In this document: in pieces, positions 498 through 54,061 of the stretch | How positions within the stretch are numbered: position 1 is the stretch's first letter | Layout: the number at the start of each line of letters is the position of its first letter | IMG/VR virus record: IMGVR_UViG_3300042302_000394 | Coordinates: 62,001-126,000 of that record | Direction: 5' to 3' (one strand) | Length of the DNA stretch: 64,000 nt | Notes under the pieces: generated by a model | The model's database searches: none | Seen by the model: the letters and a program-made list of their open reading frames with translations, nothing else | Told to the model about the DNA's origin: nothing | Translations under genes and position numbers: made by a program

Positions 498-962
498 TCA
501 ACTGGCATACCAAATTTCTTTAAACCCTTCTTCCTCAGTGGGCTCTTCCCAACTGGCAATCATGCTGGCAATAACATGATCCGGAATCTCTTTGCCAGGG
601 CGGCTCATCAATCGGCGCATAAGTTCTTTGTGTTCAGGTGTCTTAAACACTATTGCAATATGCTCATAGTCAGGTAACATGTTAAACTTGCGAGTACGAC
701 TTGCAAGAGTAGTACTAGTTTGATCCCAGATAATATCTCGATTCATTTCACGAGCCGCAACAACTTCCTTGGCCATAAGGTCTACAGCAGTGGGCATAAA
801 GTCTACAAACACTTCGCTGTAGGTGCGTCCTACTTCCTTTGCGTAGATTTCAACCCACTTGTCTGTGCTAATACAAGAGCAGGTCAACGCCCAGTCTTGT
901 TCAGCCACCCAAGTACTTTTACCTGAACCAGGCACTCCAATCAATTGATAACATTTTGCCAT
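498..962 (-). CDS. P-loop kinase, AAA_33/polynucleotide kinase-like
   Basis: GVPGSGKST Walker A, ISTD and IIWDQT motifs. Confidence 0.8.
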   Translation of the reverse strand: MAKCYQLIGVPGSGKSTWVAEQDWALTCSCISTDKWVEIYAKEVGRTYSEVFVDFMPTAVDLMAKEVVAAREMNRDIIWDQTSTTLASRTRKFNMLPDYEHIAIVFKTPEHKELMRRLMSRPGKEIPDHVIASMIASWEEPTEEEGFKEIWYAS

Positions 963-1430
963 TTAATCTACACTCCTAAAAGTTCGCCAATCGTCTATGT
1001 TTGGCTTTTCATCTTCATCATATGTCCAACCCAAAGCCTTCATCATGCGATGCTTGACCAATAGGTTGGGGCTACGGAATCTACCTGTGTCTTCAAAGCC
1101 CATCATAACACCAACTTCGCAAACTGCACCACTGCGGCAAATACCCGCATAGCAGTGAACAACTACATTCATACGGTTGTCCTTTGCGTGTTGCAACAGT
1201 CGAACAAGCTCGTTAGCCTGCTCTTGACTACATTTCATTGCTTCTTCCAACACTTCGTCCTTGGCCTCTACGTCCAAAAACTCAAAGTTGTGTTGCTCTT
1301 TAAACTTGTGAGCAGGCACAGGGCGCCAGCTGGCCGGATCAACAATGCTGATCAGCATACTGTTCTCACCTGCCTCATGATGAAACCTTGTGGGTATATC
1401 AGCGGCCGCTACGTTTTCAATCCATGGCAT
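963..1430 (-). CDS. Cys-dependent (tyrosine/dual-specificity-like) phosphatase
   Basis: VHCYAGICRS = HCxxGxxRS signature. Confidence 0.8.
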   Translation of the reverse strand: MPWIENVAAADIPTRFHHEAGENSMLISIVDPASWRPVPAHKFKEQHNFEFLDVEAKDEVLEEAMKCSQEQANELVRLLQHAKDNRMNVVVHCYAGICRSGAVCEVGVMMGFEDTGRFRSPNLLVKHRMMKALGWTYDEDEKPNIDDWRTFRSVD

Positions 1431-21143: not shown

Positions 21144-21284
21144 TTATCTTGTGAATTTTCTTACTAGTTTTAGCCAGTAGTATTTAACTCCGCGGAATGA
21201 TGGAGGCCAATCCATTCCGAAACTAGGAGTTATTTCTTTTGGGACATTACCGTATGCTTTGTCAAGCGTTTCTTTTACTTTCAT
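21144..21284 (-). CDS. Small hypothetical protein (46 aa, MKVKETLDKAYG)
   Basis: AAGGAG RBS, open frame between RNA genes. Confidence 0.55.
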   Translation of the reverse strand: MKVKETLDKAYGNVPKEITPSFGMDWPPSFRGVKYYWLKLVRKFTR

Positions 21285-21300: not shown

Positions 21301-21422
21301 AACAGGTTCTCATTTTATGTGCTACCACTACACCAACACCGCTGACCAAGCAGTGCCCAGGATTCGAACCTGGCCCGTCTTTTTTACAGAAAGTTTAATA
21401 AGATTGCTGAAAAGAACCTAAA
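21301..21422 (-). ncRNA. CAGCAA-motif RNA E1 with permuted tRNA module (anticodon GUA, T, acceptor hairpin, D)
   Basis: TTAGGTTCTTTTCAGCAA...AGAACCTGTT terminal stem; internal CCAGGTTCGAATCCTGG then TGGTGTAGTGGTAGCACA. Confidence 0.75.
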
Positions 21423-21433
21423 TGGTCAAACCA

Positions 21434-21548
21434 TTTGTTATATTGTAGATTTTATCAGTTTATTGTTCTACAACCTCACGACGCCATGGCAGCTATACTG
21501 CCGCACTGCTCGATACCACCTCCCCTTTCAGGGCGTCCGGAATAACAA
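21434..21548 (-). ncRNA. Putative structured RNA
   Basis: TTTGTTAT...ATAACAAA terminal complementarity with internal hairpins. Confidence 0.35.
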
Positions 21549-21553
21549 AATAA

Positions 21554-21673
21554 AACAGGATACCTTTTTCGATGGCTTGGAAGCCATTGCTCTACCATTG
21601 AGCGATCTACGCAAAAGCGTGGAGTTGGAATCGAACCAACATGTCATTTAAGACGTTGCTGCATGTATCCTAA
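21554..21673 (-). ncRNA. CAGCAA-motif RNA E2 with permuted tRNA module (T, acceptor hairpin, D, anticodon-like)
   Basis: TTAGGATACATGCAGCAA...GTATCCTGTT; GTTGGTTCGATTCCAAC then GCTCAATGGTAGAGC. Confidence 0.75.
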
Positions 21674-21676
21674 AAT

Positions 21677-21750
21677 TGGATGCGGGCCCAGGATTTGAAC
21701 CTGGGATGCTCCGAGCTTATGAGACTGGAGTGGTGGCCGCCCTGCCCGCT
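21677..21750 (-). tRNA. tRNA-Met(CAT)-like, degenerate D arm
   Basis: CTCATAA loop, T arm, CCA. Confidence 0.6.
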
Positions 21751-21817
21751 ATATTCTTTGCCACACTACTTATCCTATTATACACCGTGTGCCATGGTGA
21801 ATTCTTTCTTGTATTTA

Positions 21818-21895
21818 TGGTCGGAATAGTAGGATTCGAACCTACGACCCTCGCGTCCCAAACGCGATGCGCTAACCAGACTGCGCTACATTCCG
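21818..21895 (-). tRNA. tRNA-Pro(TGG)
   Basis: Canonical cloverleaf with CCA. Confidence 0.92.
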
Positions 21896-21902
21896 ATTTA
21901 AA

Positions 21903-21978
21903 TGGTACCTGGTGTCAGACTCGAACTGACATCGTTCTCCGTGTAAAGGAGATGCATAACCTCTCTGCGCAACCAGGC
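21903..21978 (-). tRNA. tRNA-Val(TAC)
   Basis: TCTCC-TTTACAC-GGAGA arm, CCA. Confidence 0.88.
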
Positions 21979-21985
21979 AAAAATA

Positions 21986-22059
21986 TGGAGCGGGGTAAGA
22001 GAATCGAACTCTCAGCATGAGCTTGGAAGGCTCAGGTATTACCACTATACGAACCCCGC
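21986..22059 (-). tRNA. tRNA-Gly(TCC)
   Basis: Canonical cloverleaf with CCA. Confidence 0.92.
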
Positions 22060-22062
22060 ATA

Positions 22063-22183
22063 CTTTATTAAAACATACTCCCAACAAGTGTCTTATGCTT
22101 GTTGTACCGTGTGCTAGGCACATTTCCTTTGCAAGGCTCCCCCGGGTTTGGGCTACGTAGACAAAGAATATATTTTAATAAAG
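22063..22183 (-). ncRNA. Structured RNA with long AT-rich terminal helix
   Basis: CTTTATTAAAATATA...TATGTTTTAATAAAG pairing. Confidence 0.5.
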
Positions 22184-22187
22184 TTAC

Positions 22188-22293
22188 CTTATTGAAACAC
22201 ACTGTTGCGGCCGCAGGATACCGAGTGATGTAGTGAGTCGGAATCAAACCTTCCCAATCTACACAGTGCTCTCCACAATGCGTTTCAATAAAG
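22188..22293 (-). ncRNA. Structured RNA with long AT-rich terminal helix
   Basis: TTATTGAAACGCATTGT...ACAGTGTGTTTCAATAA pairing. Confidence 0.5.
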
Positions 22294-22495
22294 TGTCTAG
22301 CTACTCACACCACATGAGCCCTAAACTGGTCTGTTGCTACGTCCATAACATTTTCTTCTTCTGGAAAGGCTGTTAATCCTCACCCTAGGCAGTTTCCAGT
22401 ATCCCTTAAATAGGGACTGTGAGGTCAGGTCCTAGTGTACCCTCTGGTCTATCGTTACAGAGACGCTATTTCGTTACGTAGAAATAGTAAGACGG
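22294..22495 (-). ncRNA. Putative ~200 nt structured RNA
   Basis: Non-coding, GC-richer than flanks, several hairpins, imperfect end pairing. Confidence 0.35.
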
Positions 22496-22501
22496 GTTTT
22501 C

Positions 22502-22566
22502 AACAGGTTAATACTAGTTTAATGACCTAGCAGTCGCCATATTTTTGATAGCTGTAATTAACCTAA
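22502..22566 (-). ncRNA. CAGCAA-motif RNA E3 (short form)
   Basis: TTAGGTTAATTACAGCTA...ATTAACCTGTT. Confidence 0.65.
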
Positions 22567-22571
22567 AAACT

Positions 22572-22646
22572 TGGTGCCCCGTGTCTGAATCGAACAGACG
22601 ATCTCCGCTTTACAAGAGCGGCGCATTGCCACTGTGCTAACAGGGC
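22572..22646 (-). tRNA. tRNA-Thr(TGT)
   Basis: Cloverleaf with CCA. Confidence 0.9.
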
Positions 22647-22655
22647 GCAATATAT

Positions 22656-22922
22656 TTAACCGCCCTGAGTGGAATCACTTACATTCTTTGACTGTTCATC
22701 TGCTAGATATGATGCTAGCTTTGATTGAAAGTCAGCTTCTGTTAGACCATGCCAACCGACACACTTACCAGTCGGACTACGACCACAACCGCATTTTCCA
22801 ATCTCATCTGCATTTTCTTGTACTCTTACTTGCATATCTTTCTTTCCAAAAATAGCGTCATAGTTGTTAGCAAATGTATTCTGGCTAACGCTAAACGGAC
22901 GAGCTCTTGAACCTTTTGACAT
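22656..22922 (-). CDS. CDGSH-like iron-sulfur protein
   Basis: CGCGRSPTGKCVGWH 3Cys-1His motif. Confidence 0.65.
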   Translation of the reverse strand: MSKGSRARPFSVSQNTFANNYDAIFGKKDMQVRVQENADEIGKCGCGRSPTGKCVGWHGLTEADFQSKLASYLADEQSKNVSDSTQGG

Positions 22923-23152
22923 TACCGAACCTTTTTAAGATACTCTCTACCAATTTTACCTGCTTCAATTTCTTGCAAGGCAGTAATAGTGGCACTGTTG
23001 GTTCCGCTAACTTGTTTAGCATGTCCACGTCGCAGTTCGCGAACTCGAGCACTGGCAATCAGAACTAGATCAAATCTATTGCCCACGGCTTCGACACATT
23101 TGTCTGTGTCGATGTTCTGTGGAGAAAAGGGAACTTTAATAACTTTAATCAT
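22922..23152 (-). CDS. rpoZ: RNA polymerase omega subunit homolog
   Basis: NRFDLVLIASARVREL...TALQEIEAGKIG. Confidence 0.85.
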   Translation of the reverse strand: MIKVIKVPFSPQNIDTDKCVEAVGNRFDLVLIASARVRELRRGHAKQVSGTNSATITALQEIEAGKIGREYLKKVR

Positions 23153-23179
23153 CTATTACTTTCGTTGGTTTAAAAAATT

Positions 23180-23255
23180 TGGCTCCCCGGGCAAGGATCG
23201 AACTTGCGACCAACAGATTAACAGTCTGCTGCTACTACCGCTGAGCTACCAGGGA
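23180..23255 (-). tRNA. tRNA-Asn(GTT)
   Basis: Cloverleaf with CCA. Confidence 0.92.
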
Positions 23256-23262
23256 ATATACT

Positions 23263-23436
23263 TTACTTTGCGTCTCGCTCTTTAGAGGATCGCGGAACAA
23301 TGTTCGCAGCCACTTGAGCATCTATCATTGCATTTTTGAATCCATGACGGTCTTGATCGTTCTTAAAACTCATCAATGCTATCATAGTCTTTGCTCTTTT
23401 ACTCAACCTAAAAGTTGAACCTGTTCTTGCTCTCAT
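23263..23436 (-). CDS. Small hypothetical protein (57 aa, MRARTGSTFRLSK)
   Basis: AAGGA RBS, open frame. Confidence 0.5.
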   Translation of the reverse strand: MRARTGSTFRLSKRAKTMIALMSFKNDQDRHGFKNAMIDAQVAANIVPRSSKERDAK

Positions 23437-23457
23437 TTTATTCCTTAAAAAATTTTA

Positions 23458-23532
23458 TGGTGGACCGAGGGAGGATCGAACTCCCACCCGAGGCTTGCAA
23501 AGCCACTGTGCTCCCATTATCACTATCAGCCC
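23458..23532 (-). tRNA. tRNA-Ala(TGC)
   Basis: G3:U70, TGC loop, CCA. Confidence 0.88.
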
Positions 23533-23613
23533 ATATTAAAACACATTTAAACAGTCCTTCAACGCTAGTCGCTATCTCCCCTACTAGAGGGCGGATCTGT
23601 ATGTGTTTTAATA
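23533..23613 (-). ncRNA. Structured RNA with AT-rich terminal helix
   Basis: ATATTAAAACACAT...ATGTGTTTTAATAT perfect inverted ends. Confidence 0.5.
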
Positions 23614-23697
23614 TGGTGCCCCAGGTCGGACTCGAACCGACACGCCTCTCGGCACTGGCTTCTAAGACCAGCGTGGCTACCATTACACCACCGGGGC
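23614..23697 (-). tRNA. tRNA-Leu(TAG)
   Basis: Long variable arm, CCA. Confidence 0.92.
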
Positions 23698-23705
23698 AAA
23701 TTTTT

Positions 23706-23734
23706 ATTATACAGGATATTTATAATCCTGTCAA
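23706..23734 (-). promoter_or_regulatory. sigma70-type promoter with nested TATAAATA
   Basis: TTGACA-N17-TATAAT. Confidence 0.7.
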
Positions 23735-23751
23735 CCTCTATTTTAATAACT

Positions 23752-23828
23752 TGGTGCGCCCACTAGGACTTGAACCTAGGACCAAAGGATTATGAGTCCT
23801 CTGCTCTGACCAACTGAGCTATAGGCGC
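23752..23828 (-). tRNA. tRNA-Met/Ile2(CAT)
   Basis: Canonical cloverleaf, CTCATAA loop. Confidence 0.88.
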
Positions 23829-23837
23829 ATCAATCAT

Positions 23838-23929
23838 TGGTACCAGCGGAGGGGATCGAACCCTCTCAAGAACGCTAATCTGGCGCTAAAAGGTCTATAA
23901 GGCCTCTCTGACTACCAAGTCTCGCTGGC
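23838..23929 (-). tRNA. Atypical tRNA, TAT anticodon, long variable arm
   Basis: 7-bp acceptor, T arm, CCA; CTTATAG loop; 4-nt D loop. Confidence 0.6.
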
Positions 23930-23938
23930 ATGTATGTT

Positions 23939-24028
23939 TGGCGGTGCGACTGAGACTCGAACTCAGAACCCGGATTACGCCGAGCGACGGATTAGCAATC
24001 CGCTCTAATACCATTATAGGACCGCACC
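23939..24028 (-). tRNA. tRNA-Ser(GCT)
   Basis: Long variable arm, G73, CCA. Confidence 0.9.
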
Positions 24029-24037
24029 AAATTTCCA

Positions 24038-24155
24038 TTAGTTGAATCCTCTACACTATATGCCTATCCTCAACACGCTTTACTCGAGTTGACGGTTTAT
24101 TGAATAGGTTACATAACGTATGATCAAACCTCTGTGCTTGCAAAGGATTCAATTA
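24038..24155 (-). ncRNA. Putative structured RNA
   Basis: TTGAATCCT...AGGATTCAA terminal stem between tRNAs. Confidence 0.4.
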
Positions 24156-24156
24156 A

Positions 24157-24240
24157 TGGTGCGAGAGACGGGACTCGAACCCGTATGCCTTTCGGCGGCA
24201 GATTTTAAGTCTGCTGAGTATACCATTTCTCCACTCTCGC
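24157..24240 (-). tRNA. tRNA-Leu(TAA)
   Basis: Long variable arm, CCA. Confidence 0.92.
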
Positions 24241-24257
24241 AAAATACTAACTTTACA

Positions 24258-24326
24258 TTTTTAAAGAACAGTGCTGTTATTAGCAGCGTATGTATAAATT
24301 ATACTGTCTTTCTCAGTGTGTGTCAA
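24258..24326 (-). promoter_or_regulatory. sigma70 promoter followed by hairpin and boxA-like element
   Basis: TTGACA(24326)-N17-TATAAT then TGTTCTTTAAAAA. Confidence 0.65.
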
Positions 24327-24346
24327 CAGGTATTTAAAAATATTTT

Positions 24347-24420
24347 TGGTGCTCAAGCAAAGAATCGAACTTTGATTGCTGTCGTACCAAGACAGTGTAC
24401 TACCATTGTACTACAAGAGC
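24347..24420 (-). tRNA. tRNA-Thr(GGT)
   Basis: Cloverleaf with CCA. Confidence 0.88.
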
Positions 24421-24456
24421 ATTTTTGTGTTATCACTAGGAATCAAATCTAAATGT

Positions 24457-25947
24457 TTATTTTAGAGACATGAGATCATTATAATACGTTTGTACAAACA
24501 AGTGAACTCTATTTTGCCATTCATTGTCTAAGTTGTATTCGCCCCATCGCAGTCTATCTATTTCTTCAACAGTGTATCCAAATTGTAGGACTTCAACTGC
24601 GTTCCAGCCGCCTCTTTTAACATGCGGGGCCGCGCTTTCAGTTAGCAAATTTGTCCATTTTACTACATCTAAAAATGTAAGACCTGATGAATGCTTCCAC
24701 CAAGTTTGTCTCCAGAGACGCTTACCAATAGCGTAAGACTCGGGCAATACCTGTATTATTTCAAATCCATATTTTTCTGCATTACGTTCAAACTCACTAG
24801 TGAATACCGAAGTATCAGGTTTATTAAGTAATAAGGGAATTATTTTCCAGGATGTTATTTTATTATCGACACACCAGTTATGAGTTTCTTTTAAATCATC
24901 TAATGTTTCTGGAGGAATGCCTGCGATAAAACTAAGATGTTCTTTTACTTTTCCCTGCCATCTGTCCTGTAACAAATGAGGCAAATAGTCTTTGGCTTTT
25001 TTTCCGCTAAATGCCTTTCCTACCAAAGCAGATGCATCTTTATTAAAACTTTCTATTCCAAAAAAAGCTCCATAAAGACCGCTTTCCAATAACATATCTT
25101 CAGTATGACGATGAGCCTCAATTAAATCTAATCTTAAATAAGTTGCATATTTAATTTTAAAAGGTAAGGATGATACCATTTTGGCAAATTCTTCCAATCT
25201 TTCGGTGTCTGCATTAAATGTATCGTCTAAAATATAATAATTCGTTGTTCCAAATCTTTCGTAATTGTCAAGTAACTCATCTCTTATATTTTCCATCGGT
25301 TTAAGGAAATCTTTTTTATTTTTTCCAATTAACGGATATTGACAGAATTTACACTTAAAAATGCATCCCCTGGTTGTTTCTAACGGCAATGCTTCATTTG
25401 GCTGTATAGCATCACTGTCATGCCACCTAAAATTACACTGCTCAATTGAAAATCCTTCATTACTTTGATACGAAGATTCTTTTACAATTTTGTAACCGTC
25501 TGCACCTATTTCGACAAATGGCTGTGGACCTTTTTTAAAAATCCAATTGCAAAATTGTAACATTGTATTTTCAGCATGACCTGTAAAATAATAATCAAGT
25601 GTTTTTTTTAATTTTCCTTTAATTATACCAACAGATGGGCCACCGGCTATTATTTTTAAATTTGGATGTTTTGTTTTAAGTTGTTTAATTGCTGAACTGA
25701 ATATAGAAAAGAATACATCGTTAGCTTCTAATAAAATTCCTCCAAGGCCTATAACTTTGGTTTCATCTGTTACAAATTTTTCAAACAGTGCATTTACTTT
25801 ATCCAATGTAAAAATTGGTTCAGAATAATTTATAACCTGTACTGTATAACCAAAGAGTCTTAAATACCAAGCTAATTGGTGACCCCCAATTGATCTAGGA
25901 GCGGCGCCCCGATAATCGCTAATTGTTTGTATAATAATAACATTCAT
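24457..25947 (-). CDS. Radical SAM protein with B12-binding-like N-terminus
   Basis: ETTRGCIFKCKFC, DDTFN, FGIES; paralog of 12239-13771. Confidence 0.85.
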   Translation of the reverse strand: MNVIIIQTISDYRGAAPRSIGGHQLAWYLRLFGYTVQVINYSEPIFTLDKVNALFEKFVTDETKVIGLGGILLEANDVFFSIFSSAIKQLKTKHPNLKIIAGGPSVGIIKGKLKKTLDYYFTGHAENTMLQFCNWIFKKGPQPFVEIGADGYKIVKESSYQSNEGFSIEQCNFRWHDSDAIQPNEALPLETTRGCIFKCKFCQYPLIGKNKKDFLKPMENIRDELLDNYERFGTTNYYILDDTFNADTERLEEFAKMVSSLPFKIKYATYLRLDLIEAHRHTEDMLLESGLYGAFFGIESFNKDASALVGKAFSGKKAKDYLPHLLQDRWQGKVKEHLSFIAGIPPETLDDLKETHNWCVDNKITSWKIIPLLLNKPDTSVFTSEFERNAEKYGFEIIQVLPESYAIGKRLWRQTWWKHSSGLTFLDVVKWTNLLTESAAPHVKRGGWNAVEVLQFGYTVEEIDRLRWGEYNLDNEWQNRVHLFVQTYYNDLMSLK

Positions 25948-25987
25948 AATAGTAAACAAATATTTATCATTAACTGTATATAAAACT

Positions 25988-26062
25988 TGGTCCCGCCAGT
26001 AGGAATCGAACCTACATTTAAGTCTTAGGAGGACCCCGTACTATCCATTGTACTATAGCGAG
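25988..26062 (-). tRNA. tRNA-Arg(CCT)
   Basis: Cloverleaf with CCA. Confidence 0.88.
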
Positions 26063-26065
26063 ATA

Positions 26066-26140
26066 TGGCCGGTCTTGAGAGGATCGAACTCCCACCCTCG
26101 GTTTCGAAGACCGAGATGATATCCATTTCACCAAAGACCG
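26066..26140 (-). tRNA. tRNA-Arg(TCG)
   Basis: Cloverleaf with CCA. Confidence 0.88.
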
Positions 26141-26145
26141 ATATG

Positions 26146-26220
26146 TGGTACCGCCTACAGGAATCGAACCCATATTCGCAGGGTAGAAGCCTGCCGTATT
26201 ATCCATTATACGAAAGCGGT
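26146..26220 (-). tRNA. tRNA-Arg(TCT)
   Basis: GCAGG-CTTCTAC-CCTGC arm, CCA. Confidence 0.88.
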
Positions 26221-26221
26221 G

Positions 26222-26311
26222 TGGCAGTGAGTGAGAGATTCGAACTCTCGTGCCCCTTACGGAACCATCACCTTTCCAAGATGCGCCAATAGGCCTCTCT
26301 GGCAACTCACT
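26222..26311 (-). tRNA. tRNA-Ser(GGA)
   Basis: Long variable arm, CCA. Confidence 0.85.
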
Positions 26312-26317
26312 ATTGTT

Positions 26318-26395
26318 TGGTACCCCTGACCGGATTCGAACCGGTACTTGACAATGTTTAAGACTGTTGCCTGCTACCAATTGGGCTACAGGGGC
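26318..26395 (-). tRNA. tRNA with TAA anticodon and short variable loop (Leu?)
   Basis: ACAGT-CTTAAAC-ATTGT arm, CCA. Confidence 0.75.
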
Positions 26396-26403
26396 AAATA
26401 GGT

Positions 26404-26550
26404 TTTTGAGAGACCAGCTATCTTTCTCAAGGACTCACTGGCTTGTCTCGTATGAAGGAGTTTAAACTACCTTGTGTTGCTACTGGTGTGTCAGTCTCAA
26501 GAATAGGGACCTAGCGCACAAGGGACTCTACTTCAACGTCTATCTCAAAA
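26404..26550 (-). ncRNA. Putative structured RNA
   Basis: TTTTGAGA...TCTCAAAA terminal stem; shares AAGTAGAGTC...CTAGGT with 27118-27327. Confidence 0.45.
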
Positions 26551-26552
26551 CT

Positions 26553-26628
26553 TGGCGTCCCATAGCGGATTCGAACCGCTGTAAATACCGTGAAAGGGTA
26601 CTATCCTAGGCCTCTAGATGAATGGGAC
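26553..26628 (-). tRNA. tRNA-Glu(TTC)
   Basis: Cloverleaf with CCA. Confidence 0.9.
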
Positions 26629-26633
26629 ATGTT

Positions 26634-26708
26634 TGGTAGTAACGGTGAGATTCGAACTCACACCGGGCACCGTATGAAGGTGTTGCACAACCATTATGCT
26701 ACGTTACC
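26634..26708 (-). tRNA. tRNA-Met(CAT)
   Basis: Cloverleaf with CCA. Confidence 0.85.
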
Positions 26709-26799
26709 ATATCAAAACACACTAGCGGAATCGAACCGTTACGCCTCCTGCACTACGTGAGGAAGCGGATGCCCACACTAGTTCTAGTGAGCTTTGATA
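26709..26799 (-). ncRNA. Structured RNA with AT-rich terminal helix and T-loop
   Basis: ATATCAAAGCTCACTAG...CTAGTGTGTTTTGATAT; internal CGGTTCGATTCCG. Confidence 0.5.
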
Positions 26800-26877
26800 T
26801 GGTAGGACTGTCCGGATTCGAACCGGAACCTGGCGGATTAAAAGTCCGCTGTGCTAAACCGTTGACACTACAATCCC
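26800..26877 (-). tRNA. tRNA-Lys(TTT)
   Basis: Cloverleaf with CCA. Confidence 0.9.
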
Positions 26878-26882
26878 ATATA

Positions 26883-26959
26883 TGGTCCCTAGCGTCAGAT
26901 TCGAACTGACACCTCATCGGTTAAGAGCCGAGTACGCTACCGTTAAACGCCAGCTAGGG
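26883..26959 (-). tRNA. tRNA-Lys(CTT)
   Basis: Cloverleaf with CCA. Confidence 0.85.
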
Positions 26960-27078
26960 TTGTTGCATATTAAATTTGTCTTTAATGTGCCAACCCTAGA
27001 CCATATACGGGATCTAAGATTGACACTATCGTTTACCTGAACGTTTCATGTCATTACCTCTTTTGTGTTTAAGTTTCT

Positions 27079-27107
27079 ATTATACAACCTTTTAGGGTAG
27101 TTGTCAA
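27079..27107 (-). promoter_or_regulatory. sigma70-type promoter
   Basis: TTGACA-N17-TATAAT. Confidence 0.7.
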
Positions 27108-27117
27108 CCGCATTGAA

Positions 27118-27327
27118 TTTGTAAGCTGTTGCGTCCCTCATATCGCAACCATTTTCCCTTGTAATAAAGCCGGCAGGGTCAAGATACGTCACTTGGGCTT
27201 TGTCCAGACGATACTCCAACTGTATTCCGATCTTCCGATCGGACGGGGATCGAACCCGCTACCTTCTACTGTTTTGGTAGTTCGAACATACCTAGACAGC
27301 GTGACTCTACTTGCTGACACTTACAAA
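27118..27327 (-). ncRNA. Variant CAGCAA-motif RNA with permuted tRNA module
   Basis: TTTGTAAGTGTCAGCAA...CTTACAAA; CGGGTTCGATCCCCG, TCCGATC-GGAA-GATCGGA, ATAC-AGTTGGA-GTAT. Confidence 0.65.
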
Positions 27328-27330
27328 ACT

Positions 27331-27408
27331 TGGTGGACGATAGTGGAATCGAACCACTGTCACGGCAGGGTTGCTACCGCCTGTTATCCTTTACAACAGT
27401 CATCGCCC
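27331..27408 (-). tRNA. Atypical Ala-like tRNA
   Basis: G3:U70, A73, CCA, T arm; 8-nt anticodon loop. Confidence 0.55.
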
Positions 27409-27415
27409 ATTAACT

Positions 27416-27496: not shown

Positions 27497-27559
27497 AACA
27501 GGATAGCATTTTTGGTTTCATTAACAGTGAAATTTTTGATTTTGCTGTTGCTATCCTAA
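27497..27559 (-). ncRNA. CAGCAA-motif RNA E4 carrying an Asn(GUU) anticodon arm
   Basis: TTAGGATAGCAACAGCAA...TTTCA-CTGTTAA-TGAAA...TGCTATCCTGTT. Confidence 0.75.
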
Positions 27560-27697: not shown

Positions 27698-27705
27698 AAA
27701 ATGTT

Positions 27706-27780
27706 TGGTGGAGGCCGGGGGTATCGAACCCCTCTAGTCACGATGCTTGCAAGGCAACGCCGCAGCCCTCTGCTGCCCCC
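27706..27780 (-). tRNA. tRNA-Ala(TGC), reduced D arm
   Basis: G3:U70, CTTGCAA loop, CCA. Confidence 0.65.
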
Positions 27781-27789
27781 AAATTGTAT

Positions 27790-27868
27790 TGGCTCCGTGT
27801 GTGAGGATCGAACTCACCTAATCATTGATTAACAGTCAAGTCCTTGCACCATGCTTGGATTTCACGGA
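27790..27868 (-). tRNA. tRNA-Asn(GTT)
   Basis: CTGTTAA loop, CCA. Confidence 0.8.
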
Positions 27869-27876
27869 ATAAATTT

Positions 27877-28559: not shown

Positions 28560-28625
28560 AACAGGATACTGTTTGCTTTTCACAGCCAAAAAGTGAAATA
28601 TTTTGGTTTGCTGTAAGTATCCTAA
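28560..28625 (-). ncRNA. CAGCAA-motif RNA E5
   Basis: TTAGGATACTTACAGCAA...TTTCAC-TTTTTGGCT-GTGAAA...AGTATCCTGTT. Confidence 0.7.
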
Positions 28626-29206: not shown

Positions 29207-29608
29207 TTACCACTCTGCGTATTCTGTTATTATACGAGAGTTTTTATCTTTTCTTTTTGTTGATTCTACACATCGCAGTTTAACTTCTTTTACATCGCAT
29301 ATTTCTGCAATAGGAACGAGATATACTTTATCTAATTCATTTACATAGACTGCAATATAATCGATGTTACTTTCATTGTAAGAAACTCTATTTGTAAATG
29401 TGTTTTGAGATAGTTTAATTGTAACTATTCCGTTACTTTCTAACGATCTAAACTTAACTTGAATTCGTAAAAGTTTACCGTCGTGTCTATCTAACACATA
29501 ATCATAAGGACAACCTTGTGGCATTTTGCCAGTCCAATATCCTCTTTTGGCAGAAACGAGCACAAATGCTGCTTCTCCTATTTCACCTTTTTCGTTTGAT
29601 ATACTCAT
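29207..29608 (-). CDS. PD-(D/E)XK homing-type endonuclease
   Basis: KGEIGE...PYDYVLD...RIQVK...IDYIAVY. Confidence 0.8.
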   Translation of the reverse strand: MSISNEKGEIGEAAFVLVSAKRGYWTGKMPQGCPYDYVLDRHDGKLLRIQVKFRSLESNGIVTIKLSQNTFTNRVSYNESNIDYIAVYVNELDKVYLVPIAEICDVKEVKLRCVESTKRKDKNSRIITEYAEW

Positions 29609-29866: not shown

Positions 29867-29926
29867 AACAGGATGCTTATTTTTCAATTAAAAGTTGAAT
29901 TTTTTGATTTGCTGGACGCATCCTAA
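29867..29926 (-). ncRNA. CAGCAA-motif RNA E6 carrying a Lys(UUU) anticodon arm
   Basis: TTAGGATGCGTCCAGCAA...TTCAA-CTTTTAA-TTGAA...GCATCCTGTT. Confidence 0.75.
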
Positions 29927-30011: not shown

Positions 30012-30076
30012 AACAGGATCAACTTTGGTTTTTTTGAATAATAAAAAAGTTTTTAAGTTTGCTGAACTGATCCTAA
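30012..30076 (-). ncRNA. CAGCAA-motif RNA E7
   Basis: TTAGGATCAGTTCAGCAA...TTGATCCTGTT. Confidence 0.7.
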
Positions 30077-30238: not shown

Positions 30239-30330
30239 TGGCGGAAAGCAGAGGAGTCGAACCCCATCCCATTTCTGAGAACCCAGTTTTCAAGGCTGGT
30301 CGCAGGACCAACCCCGCTGCATTACTTTCC
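30239..30330 (-). tRNA. tRNA-Ser(TGA)
   Basis: Long variable arm, CCA. Confidence 0.88.
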
Positions 30331-30415: not shown

Positions 30416-30422
30416 ATAAAAT

Positions 30423-30511
30423 TGGTGGAGCCTGAAGGAATTGAACCTCTTGCCAGCCACCCCACTTAATAATGGCTACCAGGTTACAGCTGGCAATGGG
30501 GGACAAGCTCC
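30423..30511 (-). tRNA. D-armless tRNA-Tyr(GTA)-like RNA
   Basis: Acceptor, GCCAG-CTGTAAC-CTGGT arm, long variable arm, T arm, CCA; no D stem. Confidence 0.55.
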
Positions 30512-30540
30512 AAATTGTTAACACTCTCTTTCGAAAGTGC

Positions 30541-30613
30541 TTATTAAAACAAACTGTTACGCTATGCGTCCTGTTCTGATTCAGAGTCAGCAGGTACCAA
30601 TTTGCTTTAATAA
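30541..30613 (-). ncRNA. Structured RNA with AT-rich terminal helix
   Basis: TTATTAAAGCAAATTG...CAGTTTGTTTTAATAA. Confidence 0.4.
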
Positions 30614-30725
30614 CTAGTATTTTTTTATCCACATAAGGATAAGCCATCCACTAGTCCGCCCGTTTAGAACATGTTTTAAGTGCGTTCCCCGGGCCTCGTT
30701 CCCGTACTATATTACACTTTGCGAT

Positions 30726-39282: not shown

Positions 39283-39285
39283 ATT

Positions 39286-39573
39286 TTATTCCTCGCAGTT
39301 CCAGCGAGACAGTGCTTTGGCTTTAGGAGTTGGACGACCTTTCTCGTCCTTCATAGGGCCTTTGTTACCCGACATGCGAGCACAAAAACTCTTGCGGCGT
39401 TTAGCATCCTTGCTGCCTGCTTTTAATTTACTAGGCTTAGTAGTTACAGCAGTCTTAAGTTTGCTGCCTGGATTCTCTCTACGATAAGCATTAACAGCCT
39501 TTTGACTAAGGCCATCTGTCTTGTCTTGTTTGTTGACTTTGTTCCAGTCTTCTAAAAGTTCTTGAATCTTCAT
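39286..39573 (-). CDS. Conserved basic phage protein
   Basis: RRKSFCARMSG...SRWNC; MKIQELLE N-terminus. Confidence 0.6.
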   Translation of the reverse strand: MKIQELLEDWNKVNKQDKTDGLSQKAVNAYRRENPGSKLKTAVTTKPSKLKAGSKDAKRRKSFCARMSGNKGPMKDEKGRPTPKAKALSRWNCEE

Positions 39574-39902: not shown

Positions 39903-39921
39903 CAGTTATTTATAGCAAAAT

Positions 39922-43040: not shown

Positions 43041-43052
43041 AGCATCCTCCGA

Positions 43053-43859: not shown

Positions 43860-43894
43860 TTTATTTGCTCCTGGTTTTGTTGACCGGTCTCGCT

Positions 43895-44860: not shown

Positions 44861-44870
44861 CCATCGCTCC

Positions 44871-52137: not shown

Positions 52138-53535
52138 TTACGCTATTACAGCGTAACGTGGAGCGTTGATTGTAGCCAACATTACATTGACTGGATCCAA
52201 CGATTCGGCGCTTAGGATGCTCTTCATGATAGCAGGGCTGAATCCGCTAACAAGGGCAACACCCTTCTTGTCATGCTTAACTGGAACGTTGCCAGCACGA
52301 GCATTCAAGTTCCAGAATACAATGTTGGGAACAGTGTATCCTGCCGCTTCATACTTACGAGCGATCATTTCCATTGCCGAGTCGTCGTGACGAGCACAGT
52401 AATTGAATTCCATATCACTCATGATAAGGATATACTTTGGCATATCCTTTGCATCAACATTGCCCTTGACTGCGAAGTCAAGCACAGTGTTAAATGCGGC
52501 GTGTAGATTAGTACTCATGTCCCATTCTGCACGTTGTAGTTGAGCCAACTTGCTCAACAGGTTACCCTTCAAGATTTCGATCTTGCTCTTGGTAGAGAAG
52601 GTCAAAAACATGTCCTTGAATGGACCAGTGTTCTTGTCAGCAAGGTACAAGCCCAAACTAACGCAAACATCCATACAGGTCAAGTTAGCGTTTCCGCCAA
52701 CTGGAGAGCTCATAGAGCCAGACACGTCACACATTGGCAACACCAGTTCATCACCGATGTAGTTTGGCAATGCATCCCATTGTGCTTGCACAACAGTGGC
52801 GTCACCACCAAACTTGTGGCTCTTGATAACGTCATATGGGTAAACAGCCGAAGCGTTAACCTTTGCGTCACCAGTAACCAACTTTGCCTTGTAAGCATCA
52901 TAGCCTACAGGGTCGTGCTTCTTAAAAGCCTTTTGGTATCGAGCAGCCGCCAACGATGGTACGTGGCTATAGTTGATGTCATCCCAAGTGTTTGCACACA
53001 TGTTCTGTTCAACTGTCTTGCTCAAGTTAACCAAACTCTTACGGTAGAACTTTGGGCTCATTCCGAAGAAGGTGCGGATTTCAGCAGCCAACGCACCTTG
53101 ACGTGGCATCCACTTTGCGGCCAGCCCGTTGCTTGCACGTAGCGCATCACCGATTAGGGTAAATGCTTGTGCCTTCACTTCCTTAGAAGTAAAGATCAAC
53201 AGGTCGTCCCAACGACCGAATTCAGCCAGGTGTGGCAAAATACGGGCAAGCGCCTTAGGGTTGGTCTTTTCAAGATTCAAAAGAATCTTACGAACAACTT
53301 CACGTTCGCCTGCACCACCACGGACGTCACGAGCCCACATCAAAAGACGTAGAGCAAGAGTTTCGTCTTGTGCTAGTGCGCGAGCAAACTGAGTGCTCAA
53401 ATCCTTACCACGGCTTGCACCAATGGCAAAGAACAAATCTACAAGATCACTCTTGCTAGATTCAAAAGTCTTCATACCGTTTGCGGTACGAGATTCAACT
53501 GGAACGGACTTAACCGCTTCTACAAATGCGTTCAT
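52138..53535 (-). CDS. DUF2828-type TROVE-like/vWA protein (Ro60-related)
   Basis: RDVRGGAGER, GRWDD, AKWMPR, DVSGSM MIDAS, SDMEF, FWNL, VSGFSP. Confidence 0.8.
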   Translation of the reverse strand: MNAFVEAVKSVPVESRTANGMKTFESSKSDLVDLFFAIGASRGKDLSTQFARALAQDETLALRLLMWARDVRGGAGEREVVRKILLNLEKTNPKALARILPHLAEFGRWDDLLIFTSKEVKAQAFTLIGDALRASNGLAAKWMPRQGALAAEIRTFFGMSPKFYRKSLVNLSKTVEQNMCANTWDDINYSHVPSLAAARYQKAFKKHDPVGYDAYKAKLVTGDAKVNASAVYPYDVIKSHKFGGDATVVQAQWDALPNYIGDELVLPMCDVSGSMSSPVGGNANLTCMDVCVSLGLYLADKNTGPFKDMFLTFSTKSKIEILKGNLLSKLAQLQRAEWDMSTNLHAAFNTVLDFAVKGNVDAKDMPKYILIMSDMEFNYCARHDDSAMEMIARKYEAAGYTVPNIVFWNLNARAGNVPVKHDKKGVALVSGFSPAIMKSILSAESLDPVNVMLATINAPRYAVIA

Positions 53536-53547
53536 TTTATTTTCCTT

Positions 53548-53590
53548 CAGGTTACTTTTAAATTAAAAAATTTTGCTGTATATAACCTAT
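53548..53590 (-). promoter_or_regulatory. CAGCAA-motif copy A abutting RBS of DUF2828 gene
   Basis: ATAGGTTATATACAGCAA...TAACCTG-AAGGA-AAATAAA-ATG. Confidence 0.65.
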
Positions 53591-53593
53591 ACA

Positions 53594-53835
53594 AGCAGGA
53601 TGGGTGTGCCAATTTGTTTATTTTCTGGTCTGGCCAATTATAGCACCCAGACCCTATCGACAATTCATGTTGACTATCTAAACTTGTGTCTGCGTTAGAA
53701 ACATACAAAGTCTTTCCCTTGTGTCATCCATTCCTTGAGTGTCTAGTTTCCTAGAACAGTATCTCCACTGTGTCCTACAACCACTTTCTATGGCATTTAA
53801 CTTTAGTATTGTTTTAATTGCTGAATCCATCCTAG
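53594..53835 (-). ncRNA. CAGCAA-motif RNA B (long form)
   Basis: CTAGGATGGATTCAGCAA...CCATCCTGCT; TTGAAC-N17-TATAAT immediately upstream. Confidence 0.65.
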
Positions 53836-53893: not shown

Positions 53894-54061
53894 AACAGGT
53901 TAGTTGTCGGCTGCTTTTATTCAACTCAGGCCACCACTCTGAGCTCGCTAGTCTATTTCAATGTTGACTCTTCAACGCACTCGGTCAAGACTCTGTGCTC
54001 CAATTCAACACCATAGGGTCTAGCAGTCCATATTAAATGAAAATTGCTGCACCTAACCTAA
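53894..54061 (-). ncRNA. CAGCAA-motif RNA C (long form)
   Basis: TTAGGTTAGGTGCAGCAA...CTAACCTGTT; shares internal GACTGCTAG with E3. Confidence 0.65.

What the first reader, a model, noticed from the sequence alone, without database searches (positions are those of the whole stretch)
21301..27327. Circularly permuted tRNA modules inside three motif RNAs, with different break points
E1 (21301-21422) reads anticodon arm CTTT-CTGTAAA-AAAG (Tyr GUA), T arm CCAGG-TTCGAAT-CCTGG, closed acceptor hairpin GCACTGC..GCGGTGT, then D arm. E2 (21554-21673) reads T arm, acceptor hairpin, D arm GCTC-AATGGTA-GAGC, then ATGGC-TTCCAA-GCCAT (Gly-like, 6-nt loop). The variant (27118-27327) has T arm, TCCGATC-GGAA-GATCGGA, then ATAC-AGTTGGA-GTAT. 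T-before-D order with a loop-closed acceptor resembles YrlA RNAs, but E1 and E2 also keep an anticodon arm. Inference: non-chargeable tRNA mimics (decoys or tethers), or precursors needing ligation and re-cutting like the permuted tRNA genes of algae and archaea.
Basis: partly seen in the sequence, partly recalled or inferred. Interest (0 to 1): 0.75.

Follow-up and report, generated by a model that had tools for sequence, protein, structure and literature searches.

The report
Phage Y-RNA-like tRNA mimics, permuted
Three small RNAs in a phage tRNA gene array carry real, conserved, rearranged tRNA look-alike modules inside a shared RNA "frame" that travels with a phage relative of the Ro60 protein, so they are most likely non-chargeable tRNA mimics working like bacterial Y RNAs, apparently in an undescribed and very widespread form.

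Summary
All arms lie on the − strand, which is the transcribed strand of a 39-tRNA array. E1 (21305-21418) and E2 (21556-21672) each hold a T arm, a loop-closed acceptor hairpin and a D arm, in that order. In E1 an anticodon-like hairpin lies 5′ of this core; in E2 a hairpin lies 3′ of it. About 40 homologous modules in uncultivated and cultured phages keep this order with strong covariation.

Every module sits inside a shared frame: a terminal stem, single-stranded CAGCAA, an A-rich 3′ side and a C-UGU tail. The window has ten framed RNAs. Three lie directly upstream of a DUF2828/DUF7788 gene whose predicted fold is a full Ro60 (TROVE ring plus vWA domain). In nine diverse cultured phages, 24 frames lie within 1.5 kb of this gene on its strand and 1 on the other strand.

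Best reading: these are Y-RNA-like partners of a phage Ro-like protein, and E1, E2 and the variant are YrlA-like tRNA mimics. They are not tRNA precursors: the acceptor loops are 3-9 nt, some are GNRA tetraloops and none encodes CCA, whereas 37 of 39 true tRNAs here do. They fail membership of Rfam YrlA because the closing stem differs. I found no published description. RNA-protein binding and function are inferred, not shown.

The parts
21305..21418 (-). E1: framed RNA with a permuted tRNA-like module. Order is anticodon-like hairpin, T arm, closed acceptor hairpin, D arm. An RBS and the ATG of a 47-codon ORF follow directly (ATG at 21284).
   Evidence: 59.9 bits; 12 loci with homologs
21556..21672 (-). 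E2: framed RNA with a permuted tRNA-like module. Order is T arm, closed acceptor hairpin, D arm, then a hairpin at the anticodon position.
   Evidence: YrlA 29.3 bits, full model length; 62.4 bits
27118..27327 (-). Variant: 210-nt framed RNA with closing stem UUUGUAAGU/GCUUACAAA and CAGCAA. It holds a T arm, a variable hairpin, a D-like GG hairpin and further conserved helices.
   Evidence: 17 bits; 27 loci; 18 of 48 pairs with compensatory change
27499..27558 (-). M4: short framed RNA (stem, CAGCAA, A/U-rich hairpin)
   Evidence: (z −3.4)
28562..28624 (-). M3: short framed RNA
29869..29925 (-). M2: short framed RNA
30016..30073 (-). M1: short framed RNA
53896..54060 (-). R1: 165-nt framed RNA upstream of the Ro-like gene, preceded by a consensus σ70-type promoter (about 54125-54095)
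   Evidence: (10 loci)
53596..53834 (-). R2: 239-nt framed RNA upstream of the Ro-like gene
   Evidence: (15 loci)
53549..53588 (-). R3: 40-nt frame in the 5′-UTR of the Ro-like gene, directly before its RBS
52138..53535 (-). Ro60-like protein (Pfam DUF2828 + DUF7788; phrog_850 'RNA-binding protein'). It has a TROVE-type helical ring plus a vWA domain with an intact MIDAS site (D270, S272, S274, T342, D374).
   Evidence: (pLDDT 95.7)
498..1430 (-). P-loop kinase (AAA_33, polynucleotide-kinase-like; 498-962) and DSP/PTP-type phosphatase (963-1430). The cut ORF at 1-489 has a homolog that matches a phosphoesterase family. Homologs of all three lie near framed RNAs in 22-28 of 120 loci.

Best explanation
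E1, E2 and the variant belong to a large family of small phage RNAs built on one frame. The frame is a 6-10 bp stem joining the 5′ and 3′ ends, a single-stranded (U)UACAGCAA directly after the 5′ strand, an A-rich 3′ side and a C-UGU(U) tail.

I propose that this frame is the binding site for the phage's Ro60-like protein (DUF2828/DUF7788), as the conserved terminal stem of a Y RNA is for Ro60/Rsr. The variable insert would be the effector module.

In E1 and E2, and loosely in the variant, the insert is a tRNA elbow mimic made of a T arm, a closed acceptor helix and a D arm. The nucleotides for the T-loop/D-loop contacts are kept (U8, A14, G18, G19, T54-Ψ55-C56, A58). In YrlA terms it is a non-chargeable tRNA look-alike.

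The RNAs are cut out of the polycistronic tRNA transcripts, since each unit starts right after a tRNA CCA plus a (R)UUUUA spacer. They would then assemble with the Ro-like ring and either tether it to, or compete for, a tRNA-recognising enzyme. This would be part of the phage's tRNA supply, surveillance and repair function, next to its polynucleotide-kinase-like and phosphoesterase genes.

Shown: the structures, their conservation and covariation, the frame, the Ro60 fold, and the genomic linkage.
Inferred: RNA-protein binding, processing, and the tether or decoy role.
For: 1. Permuted core.
- Covariation is strong.
- The model scores E1 and E2 at about 60 bits, against at most 37 bits for tRNA junctions.
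- Thirty-nine hits of at least 46 bits were found in 100 loci and more in 23 others. All but one lie in CAGCAA or near-variant frames; the exception, L083 at 47.2 bits, is a tRNA-[insert]-tRNA junction.
- ARAGORN recognises 0 of 32 in native order and 25-27 of 32 after in-silico permutation.

2. Frame family.
- The pattern hits more than 120 IMG/VR contigs.
- There are 254 distinct framed RNAs with a clear consensus.
- Ten are in the window.

3. Protein.
- The AlphaFold model has pLDDT 95.7.
- The top 13 PDB matches and the top 5 Swiss-Prot matches are all Ro60/Rsr over the full length.
- The profile's four best PDB sequence hits are also Ro60/TROVE.

4. Linkage, from RNA to protein.
- The Ro-like protein is the most frequent window protein in loci fetched by the RNA pattern (35 of 120).

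5. Linkage, from protein to RNA.
- In nine cultured phages from Gram-negative, Gram-positive, Campylobacter, mycobacterial and cyanobacterial hosts, 24 frames lie within 1.5 kb on the gene's strand and 1 on the other strand. Eight of the nine phages have at least one. Shuffled loci give 3.7 frames in total against 34 observed.
- A frame sits in the gene's own 5′-UTR in the window and in LAh_9, which suggests autoregulation by direct binding.

6. Precedent.
- YrlA RNAs with the same T, closed acceptor, D order bind Rsr, carry tRNA modifications and are encoded beside the gene, including in phages (PMC4201824).
- Thermus phage Ro60 binds two phage Y-like RNAs (PMC12135203).

7. Framed permuted modules next to the Ro-like gene also occur in E. 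coli phage ekra (L123:8452-8577, 52 bits) and mycobacteriophage Lolly9 (L127:9544-9672).
Against: - No binding, expression or processing data exist. The link between frame and protein is genomic association plus analogy.
- E1 and E2 lie about 31 kb from the Ro-like gene in this window.
- The frame does not resemble the known Ro60/Rsr binding site. The YrlA model's stem part is not matched.
- Pectobacterium phage CBB has the protein but no frame within the 13 kb examined.
- The frame could instead be bound by another protein or serve as a processing signal.
- The variant's module is weak by the core model (17 bits).
- The set used for covariation counting was selected for pairing.
Confidence: 0.6

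Rival explanations
1. The RNAs are free-standing decoys for host tRNA-targeting defences (anticodon nucleases, acceptor-stem nucleases). They would soak up or inhibit the nuclease without needing the Ro-like protein.
For: - They lie in a 39-tRNA array, a context usually read as a counter to tRNA cleavage (PMC7824862).
- E1-type RNAs keep an anticodon-loop mimic CU-NNN-AA on an invariant CUUU/AAAG stem. The triplet differs between phages: GUA, GAA, GCA, GGA, ACG.
Against: - E2-type and variant-type RNAs have no conserved anticodon loop.
- Many framed RNAs have no tRNA part at all.
- This reading does not explain the invariant frame or its tight linkage to the Ro-like gene.
- The variation at position 35 could simply be an unconstrained loop base.
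- The two readings are not exclusive. A Ro-like/RNA particle could itself be the decoy.
Confidence: 0.15
2. The RNAs are cis-acting or processing elements. The frame and tRNA-like fold would act as entry sites for RNase P, Z or E that punctuate the polycistronic transcript, or as 5′-UTR regulators of the downstream ORFs.
For: - Units follow a tRNA CCA plus a (R)UUUUA spacer and end in UGUUUUAUU.
- E1 and R3 sit directly before an RBS and start codon.
Against: - Most framed RNAs are followed by another tRNA or another frame, not by an ORF.
- A processing signal does not need an invariant CAGCAA or diverse conserved inserts of 165-240 nt.
- The terminal-stem design is typical of stable small RNAs.
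Confidence: 0.12
3. The RNAs are true circularly permuted tRNA genes. The ends held by the closing stem would be ligated, perhaps by a phage RNA ligase. The acceptor loop would then be opened by RNase P and a 3′ nuclease, and CCA added, giving a working tRNA.
For: - After in-silico permutation, ARAGORN-27 of 32 as cloverleaves.
- E1 has a Tyr-like GUA loop.
- Related phages carry RNA ligases and a CCA-adding enzyme near the Ro-like gene.
Against: - The acceptor loops are only 3-9 nt and several are GNRA tetraloops.
- None encodes CCA, whereas 37 of 39 real tRNAs here do.
- The closing stem with CAGCAA and the A-rich linkers (about 25-30 nt) would remain as an insert between arms.
- ARAGORN's anticodon calls are inconsistent.
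- E2-type loops are 5-7 nt.
- No bulge-helix-bulge is present.
- The same frame carries non-tRNA inserts.
- The window already has a normal tRNA-Tyr.
Confidence: 0.05
4. The RNAs are decaying tRNA pseudogenes or recombination debris in a fast-evolving array, with no function.
For: tRNA arrays do accumulate odd tRNA-like remnants. Several unclassified tRNA-like stretches exist in this window.
Against: - Compensatory changes occur in all three helices across many phages.
- Tertiary-contact bases are invariant.
- The same architecture is found in phages of E. coli and Mycobacterium.
Confidence: 0.03

Closest known systems
YrlA (Rfam RF02553), the tRNA-like Y RNA bound by bacterial Ro60/Rsr (Chen et al. 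2014, PMC4201824)
   Same: - The modular design matches: a terminal stem plus a tRNA-like domain ordered T arm, loop-closed acceptor, D arm.
- The tRNA tertiary bases are kept.
- The RNAs are encoded with a Ro60-fold protein, and phage examples are known.
- E2 aligns over the whole model, and the Lolly9 RNA aligns over the tRNA-like part.
   Different: - Scores are far below the family threshold (29 and 38 bits against 69).
- The terminal stem and motif (CAGCAA) are unrelated to YrlA's Rsr-binding stem.
- The partner protein belongs to the DUF2828/DUF7788 branch, not Pfam TROVE.
- In YrlA the closing stem replaces the anticodon stem. Here it enters between the D and anticodon arms (E1) or between the anticodon and T arms (E2), and an extra hairpin is kept.
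- The genes lie inside tRNA arrays.
Deinococcus radiodurans Yrn1 and the Ro60-Y RNA-PNPase (RYPER) machine; Thermus phage phiLo Ro60 with Yrl1/Yrl2 (PMC12135203)
   Same: - A Y RNA tethers a Ro60 ring to an effector.
- Yrn1 has partial tRNA-like features, including an 'anticodon arm' with a 6-nt loop (PMC4201824), as E2 has.
- The RNAs are encoded just upstream of the phage Ro60 gene.
   Different: - The binding motif differs. A CGAA motif in an internal bulge is reported for phiLo.
- No evidence here points to PNPase as the partner.
Circularly permuted tRNA genes of Cyanidioschyzon merolae and some archaea
   Same: The 3′ half (T arm, acceptor 3′ strand) lies upstream of the 5′ half (acceptor 5′ strand, D arm). 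More than one break point occurs.
   Different: Those genes have a bulge-helix-bulge at the joined termini, a processable linker at the acceptor, and yield chargeable tRNAs through a circular intermediate. Here the loops are tiny or GNRA, there is no CCA, no bulge-helix-bulge, and the frame is shared with non-tRNA inserts.
Dictyostelium Class I RNAs (Rfam RF01414; Kjellin et al. 2021, PMC7919456)
   Same: The short framed RNAs share the whole architecture:
- about 60 nt long
- a 6-bp terminal stem starting with G
- CUUACAGCAA directly after the 5′ strand (Class I motif CCUUACAGCAA)
- an A/U-rich variable middle
- a 3′ C-UG(U) tail whose C pairs with the 5′ G

Rfam scores are 24-30 bits over the full model in the window and in Aeromonas phage LAh_9.
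   Different: - Scores are below the threshold of 41.5 bits.
- Class I RNAs are eukaryotic and reported as unique to Dictyostelia. The known direct binder is an RRM protein.
- Whether Dictyostelium has a DUF2828 protein could not be checked here because organism names were masked.
- This is a resemblance, not a shown relationship.

Membership tests
YrlA / bacterial Y RNA (RF02553) | Reaches the Rfam gathering score (69 bits) of the covariance model | tested here: not met
   E2 scores 29.3 bits, E1 gives no hit, and the Lolly9 framed RNA scores 37.7 bits on model positions 23-89 only.
YrlA / bacterial Y RNA (RF02553) | tRNA-like domain ordered T arm, loop-closed acceptor stem, D arm, with the conserved tRNA tertiary bases | tested here: met
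   (invariant G53, T54, Ψ55, C56, A58, C61, U8, G10, A14, G18; G19 nearly invariant)
YrlA / bacterial Y RNA (RF02553) | Terminal stem carrying the Ro60/Rsr binding site, continuous with the anticodon-stem position | tested here: not met
   The stem and CAGCAA motif are unrelated to the model's positions 1-22 and 90-114. In E1 and E2 the frame enters at other junctions.
YrlA / bacterial Y RNA (RF02553) | Encoded next to a Ro60 ortholog (Pfam TROVE) | tested here: inconclusive
   A Ro60-fold protein is present and flanked by framed RNAs R1-R3. However, it belongs to Pfam DUF2828/DUF7788, and E1 and E2 lie about 31 kb away.
YrlA / bacterial Y RNA (RF02553) | Physically bound by Ro60; carries tRNA modifications | not testable with these tools
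   This needs immunoprecipitation and modification mapping.
Ro60/TROVE protein family (for ORF 52138-53535) | Ring of helical repeats followed by a vWA domain with a MIDAS site | tested here: met
   - Full-length Foldseek matches to Ro60/Rsr (E 7e-8 to 3e-5, TM up to 0.65).
- MIDAS residues are invariant.
Ro60/TROVE protein family (for ORF 52138-53535) | Matches Pfam TROVE (PF05731) by sequence | tested here: not met
   - Pfam reports only DUF2828 and DUF7788, even at E ≤ 1.
- The profile against PDB sequences gives Ro60 as the top hits, but only at E about 0.03.
Circularly permuted tRNA genes (C. merolae type) | Permuted halves that give a complete cloverleaf with a 7-nt anticodon loop when rejoined | tested here: inconclusive
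   - ARAGORN-27 of 32 permuted constructs, but with inconsistent anticodons.
- E1 has a 7-nt loop on a 4-bp stem.
- E2-type loops are 5-7 nt.
Circularly permuted tRNA genes (C. merolae type) | Bulge-helix-bulge at the paired termini and a processable linker or CCA route at the acceptor | tested here: not met
   The closing stem is continuous and followed by CAGCAA. The acceptor loops are 3-9 nt, some are GNRA, and none has CCA.
Dictyostelium Class I RNA (RF01414) | Reaches the gathering score (41.5 bits); found in dictyostelid genomes with the DUSE promoter | tested here: not met
   The best scores are 29.4-29.8 bits. The context here is phage.

The most novel reading that the evidence does not exclude
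The CAGCAA frame is the cognate RNA handle of the whole DUF2828/DUF7788 branch of Ro60-like proteins. Phages use it as a modular display scaffold, plugging different RNA look-alikes into one protein-binding frame. These include tRNA bodies cut open at three or more different junctions, unpermuted tRNA bodies, and 165-nt and 240-nt modules of unknown mimicry. The same handle would survive in eukaryotes as the Dictyostelium Class I RNAs, which would then be Y-RNA-like partners of a DUF2828-type protein.
Probability: 0.3. Interest if true: 0.9.

Novelty: new variant of a known kind. Interest (0 to 1): 0.75.

Why it matters
Ro60 and its Y RNAs are a conserved but poorly understood RNA-surveillance system. 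The purpose of the tRNA-like domain of bacterial Y RNAs is still open.

Here a second, much larger branch of Ro60-fold proteins appears to have its own RNA partners. This branch has 6,264 clusters at 50% identity and occurs in 710 cultured phage genomes, including Felix-O1-like, KVP40-like, Listeria P100-like, Campylobacter and cluster-L mycobacteriophages. The partners are recognisable by a simple invariant motif.

Nature has run the experiment of attaching tRNA bodies to that handle in several topologies. This indicates that the T-loop/D-loop elbow plus acceptor helix is the functional part, and the anticodon end is not.

Because the system is present in E. coli K-12 phages, the question 'what does a tRNA-mimicking Y RNA recruit?' becomes directly testable by knock-outs, pull-downs and plating on hosts with tRNA-targeting defences. 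It also flags many unannotated ncRNA genes in phage tRNA arrays.

Tried and rejected
- A near-identity DNA search of the array against deposited phages gave only tRNA-sized hits, so there is no close cultured relative.
- Single-sequence AlphaFold of the Ro-like protein failed (pLDDT 42). It was redone with a 131-sequence alignment.
- phmmer of the single protein against PDB found nothing.
- A literature search for 'DUF2828'/'TROVE' returned noise. 'DUF2828' alone returned only plant and tardigrade papers.
- Burroughs & Aravind 2016 is not held, and the Chen 2014 supplements are not held. I therefore could not check whether cluster-L mycobacteriophage RNAs were already listed there.
- A recent preprint on three bacterial tRNA-mimic families covers other RNAs: skipping-rope, DUF2693-FD and salivarius-1.
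- AFDB cluster hits had masked organism names, so I could not test whether Dictyostelium has a DUF2828 protein.
- Rfam finds nothing for the 165-nt and 239-nt framed RNAs.
- The weak 'tmRNA_permuted' hit over the variant (16.8 bits, E 4.7) was rejected as noise.
- My first D-arm regex was too strict and misclassified most modules. It was replaced.
- ARAGORN anticodon calls on permuted constructs depend on how linkers are trimmed, so I do not use them for identity.

Full report
**What is in the window.**
ARAGORN finds 39 tRNA genes between 21070 and 30415, all on the − strand. Rfam confirms most of them. Six perfect TTGACA-17-TATAAT promoters, all on the − strand, lie within the array.

No deposited phage is close at the DNA level. 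The gene content is NAMPT, NMNAT-Nudix, radical-SAM and QueC-like enzymes and a PD-(D/E)XK nuclease inside the array. Relatives occur on contigs up to about 375 kb. Both point to a large uncultivated phage.

**Checking the observation.**

- RNAfold closes E1 and E2 with a terminal stem and gives cloverleaf-like hairpins inside. The z-score is −3.4 for E2 and −1.7 for E1.
- The order is T arm, acceptor helix closed by a short loop, then D arm. This is a circular permutation of tRNA.
- E1 has an extra hairpin 5′ of the T arm, with a 7-nt CUGUAAA loop. E2 has an extra hairpin 3′ of the D arm, with a 6-nt loop.
- The break points therefore differ, as claimed: between the D and anticodon arms in E1, and between the anticodon and T arms in E2.

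**A shared frame.**
All three RNAs, and four short RNAs in the array, share one frame. After a tRNA CCA and a (R)UUUUA spacer comes GGAU-N5-CAGCAA. The 3′ side is A-rich, followed by N-AUCC and then UGUUUUAUU.

A stem-checked regex over those loci gives 254 distinct framed RNAs. Most are 50-70 nt. About 45 are 100-120 nt. Two further size classes lie near 165 and 235 nt and usually sit side by side.

**The permuted module is conserved.**

- Among the framed RNAs of 85-135 nt, 41 of 54 have a T arm followed directly by a hairpin.
- Twenty-seven pass a stricter test: at least 6 of 7 acceptor pairs and a 4-bp D stem.
- Their alignment keeps the tRNA tertiary bases invariant or nearly so: G53, T54, Ψ55, C56, A58, C61, U8, G10, A14, G18, G19.
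- Pair counting gives 95.8% paired, against 63.7% in shuffles and about 43% when partners are slid. Thirteen of 16 pairs, including all seven acceptor pairs, change on both sides.
- This set was selected for pairing, so I also built a covariance model and searched everything held.
- In the window only E2 (62.4 bits) and E1 (59.9 bits) score high. The next hits, at most 36.6 bits, are ordinary tRNA-tRNA junctions. The variant scores 17 bits.
- In the loci, about 39 hits reach at least 46 bits.
- With one exception (L083, 47.2 bits, a tRNA-[insert]-tRNA junction), every one lies inside a CAGCAA frame or a close variant (CUGCAU, CAGCAU, CCGCAA). This includes about 17 not used for training.
ARAGORN of 32 native sequences but 25-27 of 32 after cutting the acceptor loop and rejoining the frame ends. 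The anticodon it reports is inconsistent.

**Subfamilies.**

- *E1-type RNAs* keep an invariant CUUU/AAAG stem with a CU-NNN-AA loop. The triplet differs between phages: GUA, GAA, GCA, GGA, ACG. They also keep a conserved UUGGUC acceptor loop and a conserved upstream UUUGACCAUUA that could pair with that loop.
- *E2-type RNAs* keep a covarying hairpin after the D arm, with a loop of 5-7 nt that is not conserved.
- *Other phages* open the tRNA body in the anticodon stem as YrlA does, for example L096:5673-5782. Others place an unpermuted D, anticodon, T body in the frame, for example L027:2776-2874.
- *The variant* has full-length homologs. Its closing stem covaries (GUAAGU/ACUUAC against GUUAGAGU/ACUUUAAC). 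Its T arm is conserved. Its D-like hairpin with GG covaries (AUAC/GUAU, GCAA/UUGC, UCUC/GAGA). Its middle hairpin varies and is missing in three of ten members. The constant feature is thus the T-loop/D-loop elbow.

**The protein partner.**
I compared all window ORFs with the ORFs of the 120 RNA-ascertained loci.

- The most frequent shared protein is ORF 52138-53535, found in 35 loci.
- Next come a DSP/PTP-type phosphatase, the cut ORF at window 1-489 (whose full-length homolog in L029 matches a phosphoesterase family, phrog_547) and a polynucleotide-kinase-like P-loop kinase.
- The ORF is Pfam DUF2828 + DUF7788 and phrog_850 'RNA-binding protein'.
- With a 131-sequence alignment, AlphaFold gives pLDDT 95.7.
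- Foldseek's top 13 PDB hits are all Ro60/Rsr/TROVE proteins over the full length (E 7e-8 to 3e-5, TM up to 0.65). After them come only vWA domains.
- In Swiss-Prot models the top five are Ro60, followed by telomerase p80 and TEP1.
- The MIDAS residues are invariant.
- Directly upstream of this gene the window holds three more framed RNAs: R1 (165 nt), R2 (239 nt) and R3 (40 nt, in the 5′-UTR). A consensus promoter lies in front.

**Reverse test in cultured phages.**
tblastn finds the protein in 710 deposited phage genomes. In some mycobacteriophages it is annotated 'Ro-like RNA binding protein'.

I fetched nine very different phages: RSP15, CBB, ekra, ValKK3, LP-064, PC14, Lolly9, LAh_9 and B23. 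The gene lies in or beside tRNA genes in six of them and near RNA ligase, RtcB, phosphoesterase or CCA-enzyme genes in four.

Frames were defined as a stem of at least 7 bp, exact CAGCAA and at most 140 nt.

| Measure | Gene's strand | Opposite strand |
|---|---|---|
| Frames within 1.5 kb of the gene | 24 | 1 |
| Frames in the whole loci | 34 | 8 |

- Eight of the nine phages have at least one frame within 1.5 kb on the gene's strand.
- Shuffled loci give a mean of 3.7 frames in total.
- The closing-stem sequence differs between phages (GGAU…, AGACC…, AGA…, UGGAC…), while CAGCAA and the C-(U)G tail stay.
- Aeromonas phage LAh_9 has seven frames packed upstream of the gene, the last one in its 5′-UTR.
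- E. coli phage ekra has four frames. One is an E1-like permuted tRNA module (L123:8452-8577, 52 bits).
- Mycobacteriophage Lolly9 has three frames just after the gene. The middle one is a permuted module (L127:9544-9672).

**Comparison with known families.**
YrlA is the closest. It has a terminal stem bound by Rsr and a T, closed acceptor, D tRNA-like domain. It carries tRNA modifications, and phage examples are known (PMC4201824). Thermus phage Ro60 binds two phage Y-like RNAs encoded upstream of its gene (PMC12135203).

Membership nevertheless fails. E2 scores 29.3 bits and the Lolly9 RNA 37.7 bits against a threshold of 69. Only the tRNA-like part of the model is truly matched. The stem motif is different, and the partner is not a Pfam TROVE protein.

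The permuted-tRNA-gene model also fails on defining features:

- The acceptor loops are 3-9 nt and some are GNRA tetraloops.
- None encodes CCA, although 37 of 39 true tRNAs here do.
- No bulge-helix-bulge is present.
- The frame is shared with non-tRNA inserts.

I found no paper describing the frame or an RNA partner for DUF2828 proteins. The library is incomplete and two key sources were not available.

**Mechanism, and how sure.**

- *Shown:* the structures, their conservation, the frame, the Ro60 fold of the protein, and two-way genomic linkage.
- *Inferred (about 0.7):* the frame is the protein's binding site. A frame in the gene's own 5′-UTR fits autoregulation by direct binding.
- *Inferred (about 0.45):* the tRNA-like insert tethers the ring to, or competes for, a tRNA-recognising enzyme within a phage tRNA surveillance and repair function.
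- *Decoy role:* a pure decoy role against host tRNA nucleases is a live rival, and it is compatible with an RNP.

**An unexpected resemblance.**
The short framed RNAs match the Rfam model of Dictyostelium Class I RNAs over its whole length at 24-30 bits, in the window and in LAh_9. They share every described feature of that class:

- about 60 nt long
- a 6-bp terminal stem starting with G
- the CUUACAGCAA motif after the 5′ strand
- a variable A/U-rich middle
- a 3′ C-UGU tail (PMC7919456)

DUF2828/DUF7788 proteins also occur in eukaryotes, but I could not check dictyostelids. This remains a lead only.

Noticed in passing
window 28562-28624, 29869-29925, 30016-30073 (−); L128:3952-4004, 7553-7606, 7627-7689: The short framed RNAs match the Dictyostelium Class I RNA model over its full length at 24-30 bits (threshold 41.5). 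They share its stem, the CUUACAGCAA motif and the C-UG tail. This may be a cross-kingdom RNA class tied to DUF2828 proteins, or it may be convergence.
   Followed up: partly
window 27328-27415 (−): An 88-nt tRNA-like gene between the variant and tRNA-Arg. It has a 7-bp acceptor stem, D and T arms and an encoded ACCA end. Its anticodon loop is GCAACCC, with no U33. Neither ARAGORN nor Rfam calls it.
   Followed up: no
window 26709-26799 (−): A 91-nt spacer with a good T arm (AACGG-UUCGAUU-CCGCU), a 6-bp acceptor-like pairing and a long central helix. It is another unclassified tRNA-like RNA. Only the near-identical locus L118 has it.
   Followed up: partly
window 30243-30330 and 23842-23929 (−): Weak tRNA-Sec-like Rfam matches (33.9 and 26.7 bits, threshold 47) in gaps of the array. 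ARAGORN calls neither.
   Followed up: no
window 22060-22571, 26396-26552, 26960-27117, 27698-27876, 30416-30725 (−): Other inter-tRNA spacers are conserved in many loci (17, 15, 34, 45 and 26 loci) and match no Rfam family. They are probably more undescribed structured RNAs, or tRNAs missed by the callers.
   Followed up: partly
window 21419-21440 and 21340-21346 (−), and E1-type RNAs in L004, L037, L067, L076, L096, L098: The conserved leader UUUGACCAUUA just 5′ of E1-type frames is complementary to the conserved acceptor-loop sequence UUGGUC(A), giving 5-6 bp. This could be a pseudoknot or an alternative pairing. Both sides are invariant, so covariation cannot test it.
   Followed up: no
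window 21150-21284 (−): A 47-codon ORF with a strong RBS starts 21 nt after E1. E1-type RNAs in L037, L093 and L076 are also followed by an RBS-like site. Other E1-type RNAs are followed by a tRNA instead.
   Followed up: no
window 31186, 30232, 28516, 27107, 24326, 23734 (− strand promoter starts): Six perfect 12/12 σ70 consensus promoters inside the tRNA array. The array is split into several strongly promoted units and the host probably uses an E. coli-like σ70.
   Followed up: no
L128:5364-5480 (Aeromonas phage LAh_9): A 117-nt Rfam tRNA hit (53.9 bits) in normal order, ending in ACCA. Its anticodon-arm region carries an insert with UUACAGCAA. It may be an unpermuted way of joining a tRNA body to the same motif.
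   Followed up: no
L125:6471-7022 (Listeria phage LP-064): A ROOL RNA match (87.4 bits, threshold 99.1) lies between the tRNA array and the three framed RNAs upstream of the Ro-like gene.
   Followed up: no
window 22925-23152 and 29207-29608 (−): Protein genes embedded in the array. One is an RNA polymerase omega/Rpb6-like 76-aa ORF, which co-occurs with framed RNAs in 21 loci. The other is a PD-(D/E)XK endonuclease.
   Followed up: no
window 37219-44965 (−): A block that is unusual for a phage: CHASE2-adenylate/guanylate cyclase, a curlin-repeat/F5-F8 type C protein, a FecR-like protein and CsgG.
   Followed up: no
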